Notes under the pieces: model-generated | The model's database searches: none | The model's input: only the letters and a program-made list of their open reading frames with translations | What the model was told of the DNA's origin: nothing | Part shown: one piece after another, positions 6,191 to 24,162 of the stretch | How positions within the stretch are numbered: position 1 is the stretch's first letter | How the letters are laid out: each line of letters opens with the position of its first letter | IMG/VR virus record: IMGVR_UViG_3300005337_000441 | Coordinates: 62,001-126,000 of that record | DNA length: 64,000 bases | Strand: one strand, 5' to 3' | Position numbers and translations under genes: made by a program

Positions 6191-7159
6191 ATGCGAATGA
6201 AACTCTACGCCTGCGGCGGTGCTGGCATCAACACGGTCAAGCAGTTTGCCCCGTTCAACGGTCAAGCCAATCCGGGCTTTGCCACGATCGAAACCGTCTT
6301 CATCGACACGAGCCGCTCCAACCTGGACAGCAGCATCCCCGAGCAGATGACCTACCTGGTCCAAGAGCTCGACGGTTCGGGCAAGCGCCGTGCCACGAAC
6401 CATGCCGCTCTGTCCGAGAGCATCAACGAGATCCTGCTGGAACACCGTCCTGGCGACATCAACATCATCGTGCACTCTGCCGGCGGTGGCTCGGGCTCGG
6501 TGATCGGCCCGCTACTCACCAACGAACTGCTGGGTCGCGAGCAACTCGTCATCGTCCTGGCCATCGGTTCGACCTCTTCGAAGATCGAGACCGAGAACAC
6601 CAAGAAGACGCTGCAGTCGCTGGAATCGATCAGCCAGCGCCGCTCGATGCCGGTGTGCGTGTACTACCGCGAGAACACGCTGGAAAAGCCCCGTGGCGAC
6701 ATCGACCGCGATGTGTCCACTGCCATCTCGCTGATGACGGCCATCTTCTCGGGCCAGAACCGCGAGTTCGACACCGAAGACCTGCGCAACTTCCTGAACT
6801 ACCCGCGCGTCACGAGCTACCCGGCCAAGCTGTCCTACCTGGACCTGTTTGCCAAGGACATCGACCTGGACACCAAGAACGAGGCCATCGTCTCGCTCAT
6901 CACGCTGTCCAACGGTGAAGTCCCCACCGAAGTGCCTCAGCACGTCGAGTACCAGGCCACGGGTTACCTGCACGAGGCTGCGTTCAAGGTGGTCAAGCAA
7001 TCCATGCCGATCCACACGGCCGTGATCGCCGGTCACTTCAGCAAGCTCATCGGTCGCCTGGACAAGCGTCTGGCCGAGTTCGCTGAAATCCGCTCCACCG
7101 TGCACGAGAAGTCCATCCTCGGCTCCGCCTCCACGACCGACGACGGTATGGTGCTGTAA
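6191..7159 (+). CDS. phuZ: PhuZ phage tubulin
   Basis: 322 aa; CGGAG, IDTS, GSGK, GGGSGS tubulin signature, DTEDL, short acidic tail DDGMVL. Confidence 0.95.
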   Translation: MRMKLYACGGAGINTVKQFAPFNGQANPGFATIETVFIDTSRSNLDSSIPEQMTYLVQELDGSGKRRATNHAALSESINEILLEHRPGDINIIVHSAGGGSGSVIGPLLTNELLGREQLVIVLAIGSTSSKIETENTKKTLQSLESISQRRSMPVCVYYRENTLEKPRGDIDRDVSTAISLMTAIFSGQNREFDTEDLRNFLNYPRVTSYPAKLSYLDLFAKDIDLDTKNEAIVSLITLSNGEVPTEVPQHVEYQATGYLHEAAFKVVKQSMPIHTAVIAGHFSKLIGRLDKRLAEFAEIRSTVHEKSILGSASTTDDGMVL

Positions 7160-12508: not shown

Positions 12509-12844
12509 ATGGGAGAGGTCAATACAAGTAGCATAGGGACCCAGTTCTACCACCACAAGGAAAAGTCACCCACCGTGGTGCACATCCATGCAAAGAGAGT
12601 AGGACGGGTACTGTATCGCAACGTTGTCAACGTATATCGTCTCACTGAGGATCAGGATCCGAAAGATGCCAAGCTTGTCATGTTCGGCATCACGATCCGC
12701 TCCAGTCAGGCGTACTTCAACCTCGGAGATGTGAGGGTTAATCCCGGGGACCGACTTTTTGCTCAGGTGATCAAACCGGGGCTCGCACTTTCTGCAACGA
12801 TCCACGGAGTGCCTGTGGATAACTTTGCAGCCTTGTTTGACTGA
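12509..12844 (+). CDS. hypothetical small beta-rich protein
   Basis: FYHH...PGDRLF. Confidence 0.6.
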   Translation: MGEVNTSSIGTQFYHHKEKSPTVVHIHAKRVGRVLYRNVVNVYRLTEDQDPKDAKLVMFGITIRSSQAYFNLGDVRVNPGDRLFAQVIKPGLALSATIHGVPVDNFAALFD

Positions 12845-12851
12845 GGAACAC

Positions 12852-13742
12852 ATGTCCAAGACCTACATTCTCCATCATCGAGACAGCGATGGGTACTGCG
12901 CTGCGCTGGCAGCCTATGTCGCTGGCCTGACCGAGGCTTGGCAACCTGGCAATCTTGCCAACGCGATCTACATCGACGTGCAGTACGGGGAAGCTTTCCC
13001 GAACATCGAGTTGACCGACAAGGACCGGGTCTACATCCTGGACTTCTCTTACGACCGCGCCACCCTCGACGCCGTCAACGCAAAAGTCAAAGACCTTGTC
13101 GTGATCGATCATCACAAGACAGCGGCCAAGGCGCTTCAAGGTGCTTCGTACGCGATCTTTGACATGACCAAGTCCGGCTCGGACCTTGCCTGGGAATACT
13201 TCCATGGTCACGTCCCGATGAACTGGATGCTCCAGCTCGTCTCCGAGTACGACATGGGTGTGCGTGACCACAAGGAAGCCCAGTGGTTGGAGAACACCAT
13301 GGTCGCCCACCCTCGCAAGGGTGACCTCGTGTTCTGGAAAAAGATCATGGATGATCCCGTCGAACTCCAAGAAGTCCTGGAGATCGGCAGAGGCATCCAG
13401 TTCAACAACGACCAGATCCTTCGCAACATCGTTGACAAGAAGTACTACAGGGAGATCCAGTGGTCTGGATATCGTGGCGCCGTGGTGAACTCCGCCATCC
13501 TGCGCAACGAGATCGCGTACGCCGTGCTAGACGCCAGGCCTGACCTGGAGTTCGTGTGCACGACACGCATCTTCCCTTCTGGTCAGATGAAGCTGGCACT
13601 GCGTGCTCGCAAAGAAGACAAGCACATCGACATCTCCACGATCGCCGAGTACCTGGGCGGCGGTGGACATCGGGCCTCTGCCAGCGTGGTTGTTTCTCTC
13701 AGCCAATCGCTGGCATTGCAGCGTGAGTGGTACTCCGTTTAA
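12852..13742 (+). CDS. DHH/DHHA1 phosphoesterase (nanoRNase NrnB-like)
   Basis: HHRDSDG, ILDFS, IDHHKT, GGGGHRASA motifs; GAGGA RBS. Confidence 0.88.
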   Translation: MSKTYILHHRDSDGYCAALAAYVAGLTEAWQPGNLANAIYIDVQYGEAFPNIELTDKDRVYILDFSYDRATLDAVNAKVKDLVVIDHHKTAAKALQGASYAIFDMTKSGSDLAWEYFHGHVPMNWMLQLVSEYDMGVRDHKEAQWLENTMVAHPRKGDLVFWKKIMDDPVELQEVLEIGRGIQFNNDQILRNIVDKKYYREIQWSGYRGAVVNSAILRNEIAYAVLDARPDLEFVCTTRIFPSGQMKLALRARKEDKHIDISTIAEYLGGGGHRASASVVVSLSQSLALQREWYSV

Positions 13743-18248: not shown

Positions 18249-18303
18249 ACCAGAGAGGGTGTTACCCCTCTCGCCACTAACCTTGTTCTTAGGAAGAACA
18301 TCA

Positions 18304-18861
18304 ATGTCTTCGCAATACGACCGTGGTACCGTCGAACATGTTCTTCAGCACCTCCGGGAATGGGGAGTGCCAGACCGTGTCGTCGAGACAGTGACCATCG
18401 AAGTGGGAAAGAGACACCCGCCTGGCAGTGTCGGTGTGATTCGCTACTACGGTAATCTCTTCGCAGAGTACAAGTACTTTGAAGGGATCGAACAACCTCT
18501 GTTCCGCTTTCGGCAATCCGCCAAAGTGCACGCAGTTCAGAGAATCGAAGCGCAAGAAGACGGAACGCTTCGGGCAAAGTTTCGCTTGATGCTCAGCCCG
18601 CATCATACCCCCGCCTTGATGGTTGAGGGTCCAGAAGCTACTCCCGAGCTCCATGACTTCCTGGTCAAGGAATGTCTGAGTGGTCTGTCAGACAAACCCG
18701 GACACCGAGTGATGAAGGCAGCAGGCGCCTTCTTCCAAGGTGGTAGACATCAGCCCAGAGGTGGCTGGTTCTATGTGGAGTTCGCACATTCACGACATGC
18801 TCAGGCATTTGTGGACTTTGTGAACGCCAACTACCACCCCAAGCAAACAGAGCCTGCATGA
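18304..18861 (+). CDS. hypothetical protein, paralog of 20710-21264
   Basis: Shared Y.RG.V.HVL..LREWG.P and LFAEY.YF.GIEQPLF. Confidence 0.8.
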   Translation: MSSQYDRGTVEHVLQHLREWGVPDRVVETVTIEVGKRHPPGSVGVIRYYGNLFAEYKYFEGIEQPLFRFRQSAKVHAVQRIEAQEDGTLRAKFRLMLSPHHTPALMVEGPEATPELHDFLVKECLSGLSDKPGHRVMKAAGAFFQGGRHQPRGGWFYVEFAHSRHAQAFVDFVNANYHPKQTEPA

Positions 18862-18870
18862 GGAACATCC

Positions 18871-19308
18871 TTGCTTTACAAAGAAACCGCATTGCTCTTG
18901 AGTGACTGGAACCAGTTTACTCTGAGCGATTTCCTTGAGCCGCTCAGCCCCTCCAAGCTGCGCGGCTTTTCCTTCAACCCCAAAGACAAGATCGTCGAGT
19001 TCTGCGAGCTGCTCATGCCGCGCCGAACCGAGATCGTCAAGAAGGTGCTGAAGGTCACGCTCATCGATGGCTCGACCATTTACTGTGCGGAGAACCTGAG
19101 GTTCCTCAAAGAAGAAGATCATACCTACGTCGAAGCCCGCCATCTTGTGGTAGGGACCAAGCTGCTCGGCGTCAAATCACTTCCCCGTACGAGGGAATAC
19201 ATCGTCGCGCAAGTGGAGATGCGAGACCGTGAAATGAGACCCGCCATGGTCTCCTCTATCCGGTTCAACAACTTCGCGCTTGGATGTGGAGTGTTTGTCC
19301 ATTCCTAG
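18871..19308 (+). CDS. stand-alone Hint/intein-like domain protein, catalytically degenerate
   Basis: GAGGA RBS, TTG start; block A-like MLYKETALLLSD, block B-like VTLIDGSTIYCAENLRF..YVEARHLVVGTKL, C-terminal NNFALGCGVFVHS-stop. Confidence 0.7.
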   Translation: MLYKETALLLSDWNQFTLSDFLEPLSPSKLRGFSFNPKDKIVEFCELLMPRRTEIVKKVLKVTLIDGSTIYCAENLRFLKEEDHTYVEARHLVVGTKLLGVKSLPRTREYIVAQVEMRDREMRPAMVSSIRFNNFALGCGVFVHS

Positions 19309-19422
19309 GACAACGACATCAGCGGAGGAGACGTGTCGTGAAATAATGAGCAGCAATAAGTAAGAAATGCGTGGTGAGGCATCGTTCTCACTAAACCTTC
19401 CCGATCAATAATTTACCCCCAA

Positions 19423-19743
19423 ATGGCAACCAAAACTTTTGAACTGCCGGTCCTGGTCTCTCTGATCAACGGCGTCATGTTCCGCGGCACCATCCAAGAG
19501 CAAATCGATGAGCTGGTGCAGCATGTCCTCGGCGAGGACGCTTCCGTCACGGATGCGGACAACGTCGATCGTGCGATCGACTTCGTGGTTCAAAACAATC
19601 CCAAGGCCAAGCAGGCTGCGGGCGCTGTTGCAATGGCTGGTGGTCACGTCGACCAAGGCCGTTGGAACAAGATGATCGACATGTTCCGCCTCAAGCACGA
19701 GGTGGGCAGTCTGGTTCAAGAAGAAATGGCTCTGGAAGCCTAA
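19423..19743 (+). CDS. hypothetical protein
   Basis: 106 aa; strong codon bias; terminator follows. Confidence 0.75.
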   Translation: MATKTFELPVLVSLINGVMFRGTIQEQIDELVQHVLGEDASVTDADNVDRAIDFVVQNNPKAKQAAGAVAMAGGHVDQGRWNKMIDMFRLKHEVGSLVQEEMALEA

Positions 19744-19753
19744 CCCCCCGTTT

Positions 19754-19786
19754 GAGGAGTGGCATTGGCCGCTCCTCTTATGCCGT
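19754..19786 (+). terminator. hairpin plus TATGCCGT
   Basis: GAGGAGTGGC/GCCGCTCCTC then TTATGCCGT. Confidence 0.65.
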
Positions 19787-19808
19787 CAACTCATCGAAGG
19801 AGAAAACC

Positions 19809-20150
19809 GTGAGTATTCAAGAAGTCAATGATGTTGTCCAAAAGACCGAGCGCGGCTTTGAGCTGATCCGGTTCGAGGACAAGTACAAGCTGGTGTGCAG
19901 TCTGCAGCAGTCTAGCGCTGCCAGCGAAGAATGCATCTGGTTGGGTATCGATGACGCCAAGCCTCAGATTCTGGCCACGGACGCCCTGCGTCTGGGCCTG
20001 TATGACGGCCCTGTTCCCAACGGCTGGATTCCGTACAAGATCCCCGACGAAGTGATGCTGCACACTCGCATGCATCTCAACCGCGACCAAGTTCAGACGC
20101 TGATCCGTCGCCTCACTCACTGGGTGAAGACGGGTCAGCTGCAAGCCTAG
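19809..20150 (+). CDS. conserved hypothetical phage protein (TERGF...CSLQ.SS..CIWLG..RMHL type)
   Basis: AAGGAG RBS, GTG start; familiar small phage/prophage family pattern. Confidence 0.75.
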   Translation: MSIQEVNDVVQKTERGFELIRFEDKYKLVCSLQQSSAASEECIWLGIDDAKPQILATDALRLGLYDGPVPNGWIPYKIPDEVMLHTRMHLNRDQVQTLIRRLTHWVKTGQLQA

Positions 20151-20158
20151 GAAACAAC

Positions 20159-20680
20159 ATGCCCGAAAAACGTTTGTTCGTATCCATCCGTGATCTCACG
20201 GGTAAAGATCCTGCCGTGCTCAGCGGCGTGATCATCTTCAATACCGACTTGGTCGAACAGGTCAACTTTGAAGACCTCATCCGCAAGGATGTAAACACCG
20301 CCTTCGCCAACTGGTCCAGCCCTCGGATCCAGTGGACGCAGCTGTCGCCCCGCGATGGTGAGACGCTGTACAACCAGCACAACAAGCCGTTGCACCTGGA
20401 CGGCTACCCGGTCGGCGTGATTGTCGTTCGCAAGCTCGGCGAGGCCTTCAAGCCTGTCGTGCACTGTTACCAATCCATCGATTCGTCGATGTATCCGGAA
20501 GGCGACATACCTGGCTTGACGCGCCGCATCAGTCGCATTGCGCCGGAGATCCTGGTGGAAAACATCACTCGCCGGCTGTGGAAAGACATCAACTCGTTCA
20601 AAGAACAGTTCGTCGAGTTCAAGAACGCCGACTGGCAGATTCACTTCATCTATCCCAACCAGGTCCTCGGCCTGAACTAA
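20159..20680 (+). CDS. hypothetical protein
   Basis: AGGA RBS; 173 aa. Confidence 0.7.
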   Translation: MPEKRLFVSIRDLTGKDPAVLSGVIIFNTDLVEQVNFEDLIRKDVNTAFANWSSPRIQWTQLSPRDGETLYNQHNKPLHLDGYPVGVIVVRKLGEAFKPVVHCYQSIDSSMYPEGDIPGLTRRISRIAPEILVENITRRLWKDINSFKEQFVEFKNADWQIHFIYPNQVLGLN

Positions 20681-20709
20681 ATCAACCCGTCATCGAAAGG
20701 AGAAAACTC

Positions 20710-21264
20710 ATGGCGACCGAATATCCGCGTGGCTCTGTTGGTCACGTTCTTCACTATCTGCGTGAATGGGGTATCCCCGAGACGATCGCAGGCAGTGTCA
20801 GGCTGTTGCTTGGCAGGGTCGTCGATGGACCTCACCAAGGCAAGAACTGCGTGTTCTACGGCAACGAGCTCTTTGCGGAGTACGAGTACTTCGACGGCAT
20901 CGAGCAGCCGTTGTTCTTCTGGCGCATGCATCCGTTGTCATACGGCGCACAGCGCATGGTCCGTCAAGACGACAACTCCCTGAAACCGGAGTTCCGTCTG
21001 TCCTTGGATGAGACGACCTACATGGGCGGCATCCGCTACCCTGTGCTTCTCTTCCGTGGACATGACGCCACGCCGGAACTGCGTCAGTTTCTCTACGACA
21101 CGCTGGGCGCATACACCGCGACTACCAAAGACGTCACCCGGGCATCCTCGGCTTTCTTCAAGAACTGCGACGACGGCAACGGCTTCTACGTGGAGCTGAA
21201 TGACCCCAAAGGCGCACAAGCCTTCACGGACTACATCAACGCTACCTACCGACCCACCGTCTGA
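20710..21264 (+). CDS. hypothetical protein, paralog of 18304-18861
   Basis: AAGGAG RBS; shared motifs including FYVE...AQAF.D..NA.Y.P. Confidence 0.8.
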   Translation: MATEYPRGSVGHVLHYLREWGIPETIAGSVRLLLGRVVDGPHQGKNCVFYGNELFAEYEYFDGIEQPLFFWRMHPLSYGAQRMVRQDDNSLKPEFRLSLDETTYMGGIRYPVLLFRGHDATPELRQFLYDTLGAYTATTKDVTRASSAFFKNCDDGNGFYVELNDPKGAQAFTDYINATYRPTV

Positions 21265-21357
21265 AAGACAGCCCAAAAGAGACCTCCTTCACAGGGGGTC
21301 TCCTAGGGTTTTCTTTTTTCTTTCGAGCCGAGCCATCCTTTGAATAAAGGAACGGCG

Positions 21358-23493
21358 ATGAACAGCAATGCATTTCTGCGAGACGCAGATTTCTATCAAC
21401 GCAACATCAACCCCATAGCGCAGTACGCCGAACAGTCGGCATTCTATCTCTCCAAGATGACCGGCAAACCCCTGGAGGATTGCAAGAAGTGGGTCATCGA
21501 CGGTATTCGTAACCGCAAGTTCGCTGGCGTGACCGATCCGCAAGTGGACTTCTACGAACGTGGCGACAATGGTGATCGCCAGGAGACCTCCATGAAGCTC
21601 TCGGGCTTCATCTCCACGGTGGTGCGGGACGATCTGATCCTGGCACCCACCTTCACCTGCTATGTCAAGCCCAAGGTCTACAAGTCCTTGTTGGCGGGCT
21701 TCACGGTGAACAACACCAAGGTGCGCTCCATTGCCAAGAAAGCAGCAGCAAAGGCCAAGGCTGCTGGCGACATGGAGCTTGCCATCATCAAGAACAACGA
21801 ACAGGACAACCGCAAGCGTTCGAACAACTCCCTCTCAGGGGCGTTCGTGGCCGGTGGCTCTGTCGTGAACAACCCGACCGCACACAGCACGTTGACCTCC
21901 ATCACGCGCACGGTGGGATCGCTGGGCAATGCGTCCAACGAGAAGATCATCATGGGCAACCGGCATTACCGCAATGCCGACATCACTCTGGACAACCTGG
22001 TCTGCATCACGTCCCTCATGGACCGTGAAGAGCTGCGACATGCGGTCGAGAAGTTCGGTCTGGTCTACCCGACGATCGAGCAGACGCTGGAGTGCATCAA
22101 GTACTCCTCGCAGCTGTATTGGAGTGATCCGATCTCGTTTGCCAAGATCTACAAGTTCGTGGAGAAGCTCGATCCGATCGAGCGAGCCGGTGTGGTCTAC
22201 ATCGGTGACTTCTACCACGTGCGCAAGTACAACGAAGCGTTTGCCCGACGCTTCATCGGCGAGCTGTCCAAGAAGGTCAAGGGCGTGCCCGTGGAGGAAC
22301 CCAAAGAGGTCCTCAAGAAGGCTGACGAAATGGTCATGAACTATGTGCACCAGATCTGCATCAGCGAAGTCAAGGGCATCGGTAAGGACTACGACAAGAT
22401 CAGCCTGGAAGACCAGCAGACGGTCGCTGCCACGGCGCTCAATGTTGACGCAGTGGTCGAGAAGTATCGTGAGTTCATCAATGCGATCTTCCTGACCAAG
22501 ATCGTGCCGGCCTCCACCGCCTACATCCCTGGGATGATCCGCCGATCGGTGGTGCTCTCGGACACGGACTCCACGATGTTCTCCATCGACAACTGGGTCG
22601 AGTGGTACTTCGGTGAGCTGCGTTTCGATGACGAAGGCTTTGCGGCCTCGGGTGCGGTGATGTTCATTGCCACGCAGTGCATCGCTCACAGCCTGGCGGT
22701 CTTTTCGGCCAACATGAACGTGGAGCGTGAGCATCTCTTCACGCTAGCCATGAAGCCCGAGTTCGTCTTCCCGGTGTTCGCCCAGAGCGCGGTGGCCAAG
22801 CACTACTACACCATCCAGTACGTGAAGGAAGGCAACGTCCACAAGGTGCCTGAAATGGAGATCAAGGGTGTGCACCTGAAGAACTCCGCTGCACCGCGTG
22901 AGATCGTGCTGGCTGCTGCTGAGAAGATGAAGGAGATCCTGATGCGGGTGATGAATGGGGAGAAGCTCTCCATCATCGACAACATCAACGAGGTCGTGGC
23001 TTTGGAGACCAAGATCACGGACTCCTTGAATTCGGGTAACGTCACCTACCTCAAGACCTCCAAGATCAAGCAGAAGGAAGCCTACGCGCTGTCCGAGACC
23101 GAGTCACCGTTCCAGCATCACACGCTCTGGGTCGAAGTCTTCGGCCCGAAGTACGGAGTGCCGGAACAGCCACCGTACGGGGTCTTCAAGATCCCTACCA
23201 CCTTGGACAACAAGACCCGGGTGAAGCAGTGGCTCGACACGATGGAGGACCGCGACGTTGCTCAACGCATGGGTAACTGGCTTGCCAAGATGGGTAAAAC
23301 CACTCTGGGAACGATGTACGTTTCGATCTCTTATGCCAAGTCCTACGGGATTCCAAAGGAGATCGTGCCCATCATCGACATGAAGAAGATCGTACTCGAT
23401 CTGACAAATGCCAATCGGATGATCCTCGGTACCCTCGGGTACTGTCCGAAAACCAATTGGCTGCTTCGTGACCAGGTGCATCACGCCTGCTAA
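21358..23493 (+). CDS. family B DNA polymerase, polymerase subunit (phiKZ gp50-like)
   Basis: K..NNSLSG (motif B-like), VLSDTDS (motif C), KHY and EIKGV motifs; no exonuclease domain evident. Confidence 0.85.
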   Translation: MNSNAFLRDADFYQRNINPIAQYAEQSAFYLSKMTGKPLEDCKKWVIDGIRNRKFAGVTDPQVDFYERGDNGDRQETSMKLSGFISTVVRDDLILAPTFTCYVKPKVYKSLLAGFTVNNTKVRSIAKKAAAKAKAAGDMELAIIKNNEQDNRKRSNNSLSGAFVAGGSVVNNPTAHSTLTSITRTVGSLGNASNEKIIMGNRHYRNADITLDNLVCITSLMDREELRHAVEKFGLVYPTIEQTLECIKYSSQLYWSDPISFAKIYKFVEKLDPIERAGVVYIGDFYHVRKYNEAFARRFIGELSKKVKGVPVEEPKEVLKKADEMVMNYVHQICISEVKGIGKDYDKISLEDQQTVAATALNVDAVVEKYREFINAIFLTKIVPASTAYIPGMIRRSVVLSDTDSTMFSIDNWVEWYFGELRFDDEGFAASGAVMFIATQCIAHSLAVFSANMNVEREHLFTLAMKPEFVFPVFAQSAVAKHYYTIQYVKEGNVHKVPEMEIKGVHLKNSAAPREIVLAAAEKMKEILMRVMNGEKLSIIDNINEVVALETKITDSLNSGNVTYLKTSKIKQKEAYALSETESPFQHHTLWVEVFGPKYGVPEQPPYGVFKIPTTLDNKTRVKQWLDTMEDRDVAQRMGNWLAKMGKTTLGTMYVSISYAKSYGIPKEIVPIIDMKKIVLDLTNANRMILGTLGYCPKTNWLLRDQVHHAC

Positions 23494-23562: not shown

Positions 23563-24162
23563 ATGGATCTCACCCTGTTGGATGAAGTGAAGACCCAGTA
23601 CCCGATCTCGCTGATCGAGCATGCGTCTTCCTCTTACGCTCCCCGGACCTACGAGAACGCCCACAAGTCCGATCTCACGATCGCCTTCGCGTTTGACTTC
23701 CAGACGGCGGGTGAGCGCTGCACGCTCAAAGCTGCGGGCAACAAGTACGTGGCGGTTCCCCTCACCTGGGGTGTCGAGCGTGCGGCTCAATACATCGGCA
23801 AGCACATCTTCGAAAGCGGTGCTCGCCGTCTGAACATCGCTGGCAACGGTATTTACACCTTGAGTCGCAGCTACGGCTACACTCAACACATCGTCAACCA
23901 AAAGGTCTACGATGTCCTCAAGCGTGTCGTGCAGAAGTACGACGTTTCCGAGATCCGCTCCGGTGGGCAGACCGGGGTGGATGTGGCAGGTCTGGTGGCA
24001 GGCATGAAGCTCAACATCCAGACTGTGGGGCTCTTTCCCAAAGGCTGGCGTCAGCGCTTTGACGACGGCGTGGATCAGATCCGTGAACGCGAGATGATCC
24101 TCACTGAACTCATGCACTACGTGGAAGACCTCAGTGAAGAAGAAAGGACCACGCAATGCTGA
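23563..24162 (+). CDS. SLOG-superfamily (YpsA/cpYpsA-like) nucleotide-binding protein
   Basis: Y.PRT..NA..SD.T, LNIAGN, SGGQTGVD.AGL and PKG motifs. Confidence 0.75.
   Translation: MDLTLLDEVKTQYPISLIEHASSSYAPRTYENAHKSDLTIAFAFDFQTAGERCTLKAAGNKYVAVPLTWGVERAAQYIGKHIFESGARRLNIAGNGIYTLSRSYGYTQHIVNQKVYDVLKRVVQKYDVSEIRSGGQTGVDVAGLVAGMKLNIQTVGLFPKGWRQRFDDGVDQIREREMILTELMHYVEDLSEEERTTQC

What the first reader, a model, noticed from the sequence alone, without database searches (positions are those of the whole stretch)
18871..19308. Free-standing, extein-less, catalytically degenerate intein/Hint-fold gene
The whole 145-aa ORF aligns by eye to a mini-intein. The start Met occupies the Cys1 position (M-LYKETALLLSD vs C-LxxdTxVxlxDG). 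Block B reads GSTIYCAENLRF (TxxH lost), followed by the typical YVEARHLVVGTKL. The end is NNFALGCGVFVHS-stop (HN changed to HS, no +1 residue). It has its own RBS. All splicing residues are lost while the structural pattern is kept, which suggests a Hint fold domesticated for a non-splicing role such as a decoy or interaction module.
Basis: partly seen in the sequence, partly recalled or inferred. Interest (0 to 1): 0.7.

Follow-up and report, generated by a model that had tools for sequence, protein, structure and literature searches.

The report
Stand-alone dead intein kept by phages
A 145-residue gene of an uncultured giant (phiKZ-like) phage is a former self-splicing intein that has lost its host protein and all its catalytic residues, yet is kept intact under purifying selection in a small clade of related phages, so it appears to have been put to a new, non-splicing use.

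Summary
Window 18871-19308 (+) is a 145-codon ORF with a TTG start and a GAGGAA ribosome-binding site 5 nt upstream.

- **Homology and fold:** An exhaustive HMMER search links it to true phage mini-inteins (E down to 7e-13) and to eight stand-alone proteins of 143-156 aa. A profile of the nine stand-alone proteins hits solved inteins. AlphaFold2 with this alignment gives pLDDT 90, and Foldseek matches mini-inteins (TM 0.80, probability 1.0).
- **Lost catalysis:** Position 1 is Met instead of Cys. Block B reads A-E-N-L instead of T-x-x-H. The end reads H-S-stop instead of H-N-Ser/Cys/Thr. There are no exteins.
- **One family:** The nine proteins form a single clan (support 100/100). They sit at the same genomic place, upstream of a ~106-aa gene and the divergent family B DNA polymerase.
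- **Selection:** All copies are intact. A 92-95% identical relative shows 12 synonymous and 4 conservative changes. The codon-model omega is about 0.06.

The gene is therefore an intein-derived Hint-fold protein that cannot splice and is selectively maintained. What it binds or does is not known. It evolves fast and is absent from some related phages, so it is an accessory gene. I call it a new variant of a known kind, of moderate to high interest.

The parts
18860..18865 (+). Shine-Dalgarno-like GAGGAA, 5 nt before the TTG start
   Evidence: Read directly. It is one of the better SD matches among neighbouring gene starts.
18871..19308 (+). Stand-alone Hint-fold (intein-derived) gene: 145 codons, TTG start, TAG stop
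   Evidence: ORF list and translation. phmmer hits to inteins and to 8 stand-alone homologues. AF2 pLDDT 90.3. Foldseek to mini-inteins, TM 0.80.
18871..18909 (+). Block A equivalent (M-L-Y-K-E-T-A-L-L-L-S-D-W). The initiator Met sits on the Cys1 column. T6, L9 and S11 are invariant in the family.
   Evidence: Alignments.
19069..19104 (+). Block B equivalent (G-S-T-I-Y-C-A-E-N-L-R-F). Ala73 (19087-19089) replaces the Thr and Leu76 (19096-19098) replaces the His of T-x-x-H.
   Evidence: Alignment. Relatives have Gln at the His column in 8 of 9.
19267..19308 (+). Block F/G equivalent (N-N-F-A-L-G-C-G-V-F-V-H-S-stop). The penultimate His is kept, the terminal Asn is missing and there is no C-extein.
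   Evidence: The close relative L014 ends in the same way.
18259..18861 (+). Upstream 200-aa ORFan gene. It is in the same frame as the Hint-like gene, separated by TGA plus three codons. It is a paralogue of 20578-21264 and ends where the paralogue ends, so it is not an N-extein.
   Evidence: The frames of upstream genes in relatives differ.
19423..19743 (+). Conserved ~106-aa downstream neighbour (weak phrog_2278 match). It follows the Hint-like gene in every contig that extends far enough.
   Evidence: The family also occurs without the Hint-like gene.
21340..23493 (+). Divergent family B DNA polymerase (PF20286), the anchor of the conserved neighbourhood
   Evidence: (E = 1e-214).

Best explanation
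The gene encodes an exapted mini-intein: a stand-alone Hint-fold protein descended from a phage mini-intein that can no longer splice or cleave and is kept because the folded protein is useful.

Shown:
- It is homologous to true inteins and has the Hint fold.
- It has no exteins.
- The position-1 nucleophile, the block B Thr and His, the terminal Asn and the +1 nucleophile are all lost.
- Nine stand-alone copies have a single origin and sit at one genomic position, upstream of a ~106-aa gene and the polymerase of a clade of phiKZ-like (PhuZ-encoding) jumbo phages.
- The coding sequence is under purifying selection.

Inferred:
- With no chemistry left, it most likely works by binding, as a small rigid beta-scaffold.
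- It evolves several times faster than its neighbours and is present in some related phages but absent from others. I therefore lean towards an accessory role against a variable partner, such as a host or competitor factor (about 0.35). A core role in the adjacent replication module seems less likely (about 0.2).
- The partner is unknown.
For: - **Homology:** phmmer gives E = 7e-13 to 5e-11 to inteins inside phage PolA, portal and terminase-like proteins that carry PF14890. The family profile hits the NrdJ-1, Npu DnaE and RadA inteins in the PDB.
- **Fold:** AF2 pLDDT 90.3 and pTM 0.85. Foldseek gives TM 0.80 and probability 1.0 to mini-inteins, and TM 0.84-0.88 to intein clusters of the ESM Atlas.
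- **Dead catalysis:** every embedded homologue has Cys1 and H-N-[S/C/T], and none of the nine stand-alone ones does.
- **Single origin:** the nine form one clan with support 100/100.
- **Synteny:** the order Hint-like gene, ~106-aa gene, PolB holds in L002-L008.
- **Selection:** a 92-95% identical relative has 12 synonymous and 4 nonsynonymous changes, all I/V/L swaps. pN/pS is about 0.10, and the binomial P is 2e-5 against the neutral site ratio. GY94 omega is 0.055, against 0.040 for the 106-aa gene and 0.017 for PolB. All nine frames are open despite 25-37% identity.
- **Family-specific conserved residues:** S11, F44, a P-R pair, D-Q-x-F and L-L-G-x-K-S-L are not shared with inteins.
- **Fast evolution and patchy presence:**
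Against: - No partner or activity has been identified. The one complex prediction gave no answer.
- There are no expression data. The only 'RNA' runs that hold a relative are probably DNA.
- The gene is dispensable: related phages with the same polymerase, and with the 106-aa gene, lack it.
- It evolves very fast. L004 against L008 shows PolB at 87% identity and the Hint-like protein at 27%. The constraint may therefore be little more than 'stay folded'.
- The window's copy lacks even the family's usual Ser2 and its block B Gln.
- Synonymous sites are saturated across the family, so omega from the tree is rough.
- The close-relative count rests on 16 listed differences taken from short contigs.
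Confidence: 0.6

Rival explanations
1. It is an intein relic with no function. An intein was cut off from its host gene by rearrangement and is decaying slowly, like the Arthrobacter Arth_1007 intein pseudogene.
For: All catalytic residues are gone and there are no exteins. The gene is absent from some related phages. Amino-acid divergence is very fast relative to PolB. There is a precedent of an inactive intein with tiny exteins (PMC3196547).
Against: Nine lineages at 25-37% identity all keep an open frame of 143-156 codons with the same start and end. A random 145-codon frame is open with a probability of roughly 1e-3. Changes in a close relative are 12 synonymous against 4 conservative. Omega is about 0.06. 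There are family-specific conserved residues. The gene keeps one genomic position.
Confidence: 0.12
2. It is a still-active autoprocessing element with unusual chemistry. Either a Ser at position 1 acts after the initiator Met, or it works as a Hedgehog/BIL-style C-terminal domain after read-through of the in-frame TGA that separates it from the upstream 200-aa ORF.
For: Six of the nine stand-alone proteins have Ser on the Cys1 column. In the window the upstream ORF is in the same frame, separated only by TGA and three codons.
Against: The window copy has Met/Leu at position 1 and Ala and Leu in place of the block B Thr and His. The His is absent in all nine. No terminal Asn is conserved. In relatives the upstream gene is a different gene, in another frame, overlapping or 280 nt away. 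The upstream ORF ends where its paralogue ends. A one-residue N-extein would give no product.
Confidence: 0.04
3. It is a conserved subunit or adaptor of the replication module, bound to the ~106-aa protein or to the divergent PolB, rather than an accessory conflict protein.
For: It is always immediately upstream of the 106-aa gene and within 0.4-2 kb of PolB. Its omega is similar to that of the 106-aa gene.
Against: The 106-aa gene and PolB occur together without it in L015-L020, and PolB occurs without it in L011-L013. It diverges much faster than both. The complex prediction gave no answer, which is neither for nor against.
Confidence: 0.2

Closest known systems
Phage mini-inteins (class 1) in T4-like portal, terminase-like, PolA and GyrB proteins; solved examples are Npu DnaE (4kl5), Ssp DnaB (6frh, 1mi8), NrdJ-1 (8ubs) and Mtu RecA (2in0)
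   Same: They share the Hint fold over the whole length (TM about 0.8) and 28-32% sequence identity. The structural motifs are the same: D-T-x-i-x-L, C-x-x-x-x-R-F, N-F-A-L-x-x-G-V-F-V-H.
   Different: This protein has no exteins, no Cys1, no T-x-x-H, and no terminal Asn or +1 nucleophile. It is a separate gene with its own start, stop and RBS, and it forms its own clan on a long branch.
Arsp-FB24 Arth_1007 intein pseudogene (Tori and Perler 2011, PMC3196547)
   Same: It is an intein-like ORF that is practically without a host protein. It lacks the block B His and does not splice.
   Different: It is a single case, it still has 66 aa of flanks, and it is interpreted as a pseudogene. Here there is a nine-member syntenic family with purifying selection.
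HO endonuclease / WHO elements of yeasts (domesticated intein; bioRxiv 10.1101/2020.01.20.913210)
   Same: It is a free-standing gene derived from an intein that no longer splices and was recruited by its carrier (abstract).
   Different: HO keeps an active LAGLIDADG endonuclease, which is its function. The phage protein is a bare 145-aa splicing domain with no endonuclease and no catalytic residue.
Bacterial intein-like (BIL) and Hedgehog Hog-Hint domains
   Same: They are Hint-superfamily domains used for something other than protein splicing. BIL2 (6y75) and Hedgehog (1at0) are among the structural hits.
   Different: Those domains are fused to cargo and keep Cys1 and T-x-x-H for autoprocessing (review PMC7765530). 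This protein is unfused and has neither.
Small stand-alone Hint-fold proteins of other phages in BFVD (A0A2Z3EFP0, 172 aa; A0A1S5RCV4 of Lactobacillus phage P1, 143 aa; A0A1C3NFC5, 153 aa)
   Same: They are of similar size and predicted fold (TM 0.85, 0.75 and 0.67 by the query) and are uncharacterised.
   Different: Identity is only 11-20% and there was no sequence-level hit. Whether they are fragments, active or dead was not examined.

Membership tests
Intein (class 1 protein-splicing element) | Hint (horseshoe beta) fold of the splicing domain | tested here: met
   AF2 pLDDT 90.3. Foldseek TM 0.80 and probability 1.0 to mini-inteins.
Intein (class 1 protein-splicing element) | Sequence homology to intein splicing domains | tested here: met
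   phmmer E = 7e-13 to 5e-11 to embedded inteins that carry PF14890. The family profile hits PDB inteins at E = 2e-6.
Intein (class 1 protein-splicing element) | In-frame insertion between N- and C-exteins of a host protein | tested here: not met
   It has its own TTG start after an in-frame TGA, and its own TAG followed by several stops. All nine family members are 143-156 aa stand-alone ORFs.
Intein (class 1 protein-splicing element) | Nucleophile (Cys/Ser/Thr) at intein position 1 | tested here: not met
   The window has the initiator Met (TTG) on the Cys1 column. Six relatives have Ser there, preceded only by Met.
Intein (class 1 protein-splicing element) | Block B Thr-x-x-His | tested here: not met
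   The window reads A-E-N-L. Relatives have Gln at the His column.
Intein (class 1 protein-splicing element) | Block G His-Asn followed by a +1 Cys/Ser/Thr of the C-extein | tested here: not met
   It ends H-S-stop. None of the nine has H-N, whereas all embedded homologues do.
Intein (class 1 protein-splicing element) | Protein-splicing or cleavage activity | not testable with these tools
   This needs expression of tagged constructs.
Pfam Hint families (Intein_splicing PF14890, PT-HINT PF07591, Hint_2 PF13403, Hint PF01079) | Score above the curated gathering threshold | tested here: not met
   There was no hit at E <= 1 for the window protein. There was no hit in the six-frame search of the genome. 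Only one of the nine members gives marginal E-values of 0.006 and 0.02.
Split intein | N- and C-intein fragments on separate genes, each fused to an extein half | tested here: not met
   The complete Hint domain is in one ORF with no extein sequence.
Hedgehog/BIL-type C-terminal autoprocessing Hint domain | Fusion to an N-terminal cargo, plus Cys1 and T-x-x-H | tested here: not met
   It is separated from the upstream ORF by TGA. Relatives have other upstream genes in other frames. Cys1 and T-x-x-H are absent.
Endonuclease-bearing or HO-like domesticated intein | Homing endonuclease domain (LAGLIDADG/HNH) between blocks B and F | tested here: not met
   At 145 aa it is of mini-intein size. There was no endonuclease family hit.

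The most novel reading that the evidence does not exclude
A mini-intein has been exapted into a stand-alone, non-catalytic protein family that selection maintains in a clade of nucleus-forming-type (PhuZ-encoding) jumbo phages. The bare Hint scaffold would serve as a fast-evolving binding module in phage-host or phage-phage conflict. As far as my searches of the literature and databases show, this would be the first case in which the splicing domain itself was domesticated, rather than an associated endonuclease or an autoprocessing activity.
Probability: 0.45. Interest if true: 0.75.

Novelty: new variant of a known kind. Interest (0 to 1): 0.6.

Why it matters
Inteins are usually treated as purely selfish elements. 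Their only selected property is clean self-removal, and once that is lost they are expected to decay. The known domestications keep an enzymatic activity: the HO endonuclease, Hedgehog cholesterol transfer, and BIL or pretoxin cleavage.

Here the splicing domain alone has persisted as an independent gene under purifying selection, without any catalytic residue and without a host protein. That would show that the Hint fold can be recruited as a plain structural or binding module. It would add a new end-point to the intein life cycle. It would also define an unannotated protein family: there is no Pfam, PHROG or PADLOC model for it and no hit in 50,697 deposited phage genomes. It is a small, well-folding target for finding out what such a scaffold binds in jumbo-phage infection.

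Tried and rejected
- **Direct family and sequence searches found nothing.** Pfam, PHROGs, PADLOC and phmmer against the PDB gave no significant hit with the single protein. tblastn of three family members against 50,697 phage records gave no match. megablast of the region gave no match. The word-indexed search of 5.8 billion proteins found only the protein itself.
- **Single-sequence AF2 failed.** pLDDT was 36. The fold was obtained only with the nine-row alignment.
- **No active intein in the genome.** None was found with three Pfam Hint models or with the family HMM over all six frames. The record is about 80% complete.
- **Pattern scans could not be used.** The Hint alignment is too divergent for the search for related loci. 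Scans with the single protein and with PolB alone found nothing.
- **Upstream gene as N-extein or read-through fusion: rejected.** The shared frame is not conserved in relatives, and the upstream gene ends where its paralogue ends.
- **Origin from an intein in the adjacent polymerase: not supported.** The nearest true inteins sit in T4-like portal, PolA, GyrB and terminase-like proteins, and none sits in the divergent PolB.
- **Obligate two-gene module with the 106-aa neighbour: rejected.** That gene family occurs with PolB but without the Hint-like gene.
- **Complex prediction of the Hint-like protein with the 106-aa protein:** no answer (score 0.00). This is not evidence either way.
- **RNA evidence: none.** The two 'RNA-Seq' wastewater runs that hold a relative are probably DNA and give only short contigs.
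- **Promoter and terminator scan:** nothing above the shuffled expectation.
- **Class 3 intein reading:** the block F position that carries the class 3 Cys is not conserved, and the block B His and terminal Asn are also missing.

Full report
**What is there.** The window is bases 62001-126000 of a 215,768-bp IMG/VR virus record, estimated about 80% complete. It was assembled from a rhizosphere metagenome. It carries a divergent family B DNA polymerase (PF20286, E = 1e-214) at 21340-23493 and a PhuZ tubulin at 6191-7159. The polymerase is at most 41% identical to those of deposited jumbo phages such as AgentSmith, FLC9, RP12 and PhiPA3. It is therefore a distant, uncultured phiKZ-like jumbo phage. 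The flagged ORF is real: 18871-19308 (+), 145 codons, with a TTG start that is the first start after an in-frame TGA, GAGGAA 5 nt upstream, and a TAG stop followed by several more stops.

**Homology and fold.** Pfam, PHROGs, PADLOC, PDB phmmer, tblastn against 50,697 phage records and a word-indexed search of 5.8 billion proteins found nothing significant with the single sequence.

The exhaustive HMMER search of 1.84 billion representatives found 55 proteins at E <= 1e-3, in two classes:
- Eight are stand-alone proteins of 143-156 aa with 25-37% identity to the query.
- The rest are large phage proteins (PolA, T4-like portal, GyrB, terminase-like) in which the match covers a complete embedded mini-intein scored by Pfam Intein_splicing.

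A profile of the nine stand-alone proteins hits solved inteins: NrdJ-1 at 2e-6, and Npu DnaE at 2e-4 over the full length. AlphaFold2 with this nine-row alignment gives pLDDT 90.3 and pTM 0.85, against 36 without the alignment. Foldseek places the model on the Ssp DnaB, Npu DnaE, Mtu RecA and NrdJ-1 mini-inteins at TM 0.80 and probability 1.0. BIL2 and Hedgehog rank lower. ESM Atlas intein clusters match at TM 0.84-0.88. The fold and the ancestry are therefore settled.

**Catalytic state.** A clean alignment with true inteins cut exactly at Cys1 and at the +1 residue shows the following in the window protein:
- The initiator Met lies on the Cys1 column.
- Ala73 and Leu76 replace the block B Thr and His.
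- The end is H-S-stop where the inteins read H-N-Ser.

Every embedded homologue has Cys1 and H-N-[S/C/T]. None of the nine stand-alone proteins has them. Six relatives have Ser on the Cys1 column, but it is preceded only by Met. All nine lack the block B His, which is Gln in eight and Leu here. None has a conserved terminal Asn. There are no exteins. The upstream 200-aa ORF happens to share the frame, but it ends where its paralogue (20578-21264) ends. In relatives the upstream gene is a different gene, in other frames, overlapping or distant. Splicing, and N- or C-terminal cleavage by the known mechanisms, can therefore be excluded on sequence grounds. Biochemical confirmation is still needed.

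**A family with one origin and one address.** On a maximum-likelihood tree of 56 Hint domains, the nine stand-alone proteins form one clan with 100/100 support on a long branch. In all seven contigs for which DNA was available (L002-L008), the gene sits in the same neighbourhood as in the window. A homologue of the 200-aa gene lies upstream where the contig reaches that far. The Hint-like gene comes next, followed by a ~106-aa gene and then PolB.

The family is rare and is confined to metagenomes. It is absent from three IMG/VR phages whose PolB is 47-56% identical (L011-L013). It is also absent from L015-L020, which keep the 106-aa gene next to PolB. It is therefore an accessory gene of a subclade and not part of an obligate pair. 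The genome has no other Hint domain or intein.

**Selection.** Short contigs of a 92-95% identical relative in wastewater runs differ from the window at 16 listed positions inside the ORF. Twelve differences are synonymous and four are I/V/L exchanges. With about 83 synonymous and 265 nonsynonymous sites, pN/pS is about 0.10, and the excess of synonymous changes has a binomial P of 2e-5. Another close relative (L014) keeps the same C-terminus, including H-S-stop.

Across the family, a GY94 codon model gives these omega values:

| Gene | omega |
|---|---|
| Hint-like gene | 0.055 |
| 106-aa gene | 0.040 |
| PolB N-terminus | 0.017 |

Synonymous sites are saturated, so these values are rough. 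All nine frames are open at 25-37% identity, which neutral decay would not allow.

The protein nevertheless evolves fast. Between L004 and L008, PolB is 87% identical, the 106-aa protein 52% and the Hint-like protein 27%. What is conserved is mostly the fold-determining pattern, plus a few family-specific residues: S11, F44, a P-R pair, D-Q-x-F and L-L-G-x-K-S-L.

**How it most likely works.** Three things are shown: it is a folded Hint domain, it lacks any known catalytic apparatus, and it is under purifying selection. From this I infer that it acts by binding rather than by chemistry.

Its fast divergence, its patchy presence and its location in a variable block of ORFans are typical of accessory proteins that face a variable partner, such as a host or competitor factor. 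One relative also has a GIY-YIG endonuclease gene in that block. I rate this reading about 0.35. A core replication-adaptor role, suggested by the constant position upstream of the 106-aa gene and PolB, I rate about 0.2. A complex prediction with the 106-aa protein gave no answer and is not evidence either way. The remaining rivals are a functionless relic (0.12) and cryptic autoprocessing (0.04).

**Comparison with what is known.** The protein is a relative of class 1 phage mini-inteins but fails every functional criterion of an intein, so it should not be filed as one. It also fails the Pfam thresholds of all Hint families.
- The nearest precedent in state is the Arthrobacter Arth_1007 intein, an inactive single-copy pseudogene with tiny flanks (PMC3196547).
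- The nearest precedent in fate is the yeast HO/WHO family, in which the endonuclease is what was domesticated.
- BIL and Hog-Hint domains are non-splicing Hint domains, but they are fused to cargo and are catalytically active (PMC7765530).
- The top 30 AFDB cluster hits are all embedded domains.
- BFVD holds a few small stand-alone Hint-fold phage proteins at 11-20% identity, which I did not examine further.
- My literature searches found no description of a stand-alone, catalytically dead, conserved Hint protein in phages.

**Verdict.** The function is open. It is a new variant of a known kind, with an interest score of 0.6.

Noticed in passing
window 18259-18861 and 20578-21264 (+): Two paralogous ORFan genes (about 200 aa, with shared motifs at both ends) flank the block that holds the Hint-like gene. 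Homologues lie upstream of the Hint-like gene in L002 and L008. No Pfam hit, and only a weak phrog_18830 hit.
   Followed up: partly
window 6191-7159 (+), 12825-13742 (+), 23563-24162 (+): PhuZ tubulin (phrog_4733, 4e-82), a DHH phosphoesterase (phrog_4771) and a circularly permuted YpsA/SLOG protein (PF12694). These mark the genome as a phiKZ-like, probably nucleus-forming, jumbo phage.
   Followed up: partly
L002 279-872: A GIY-YIG (NUMOD3) homing-endonuclease gene sits between the 200-aa-gene homologue and the Hint-like gene in one relative. This shows that the block is a landing site for mobile genes.
   Followed up: no
window 19374-19391 (+): A short hairpin (GTGAG, 8-nt loop, CTCAC) lies in the 114-nt spacer after the Hint-like gene. 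The stem is kept and the loop changed in the close relative L014. It has no T-tract, so it is not a classical terminator.
   Followed up: no
window 19423-19743 (+); protein P0059: The identical 106-aa protein is on record on a contig of 257,852 bases. A more complete assembly of this or a near-identical phage therefore exists than the 215,768-bp record.
   Followed up: no
window 18600-19366: Relatives at about 86-95% nucleotide identity occur in a wastewater sample (runs X2 and X3), and there are low-depth variants in the source rhizosphere sample. The first ~90 nt of the Hint-like gene and the end of the upstream gene are clearly more divergent than the rest of the Hint-like gene.
   Followed up: partly
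window 19662-20150 (+): This ORF matches phrog_3849 (5e-20, unknown function). Together with 20159-20680 and the second paralogue, it is inserted between the 106-aa gene and PolB in this phage, but not in L003, L004, L006 or L007.
   Followed up: no
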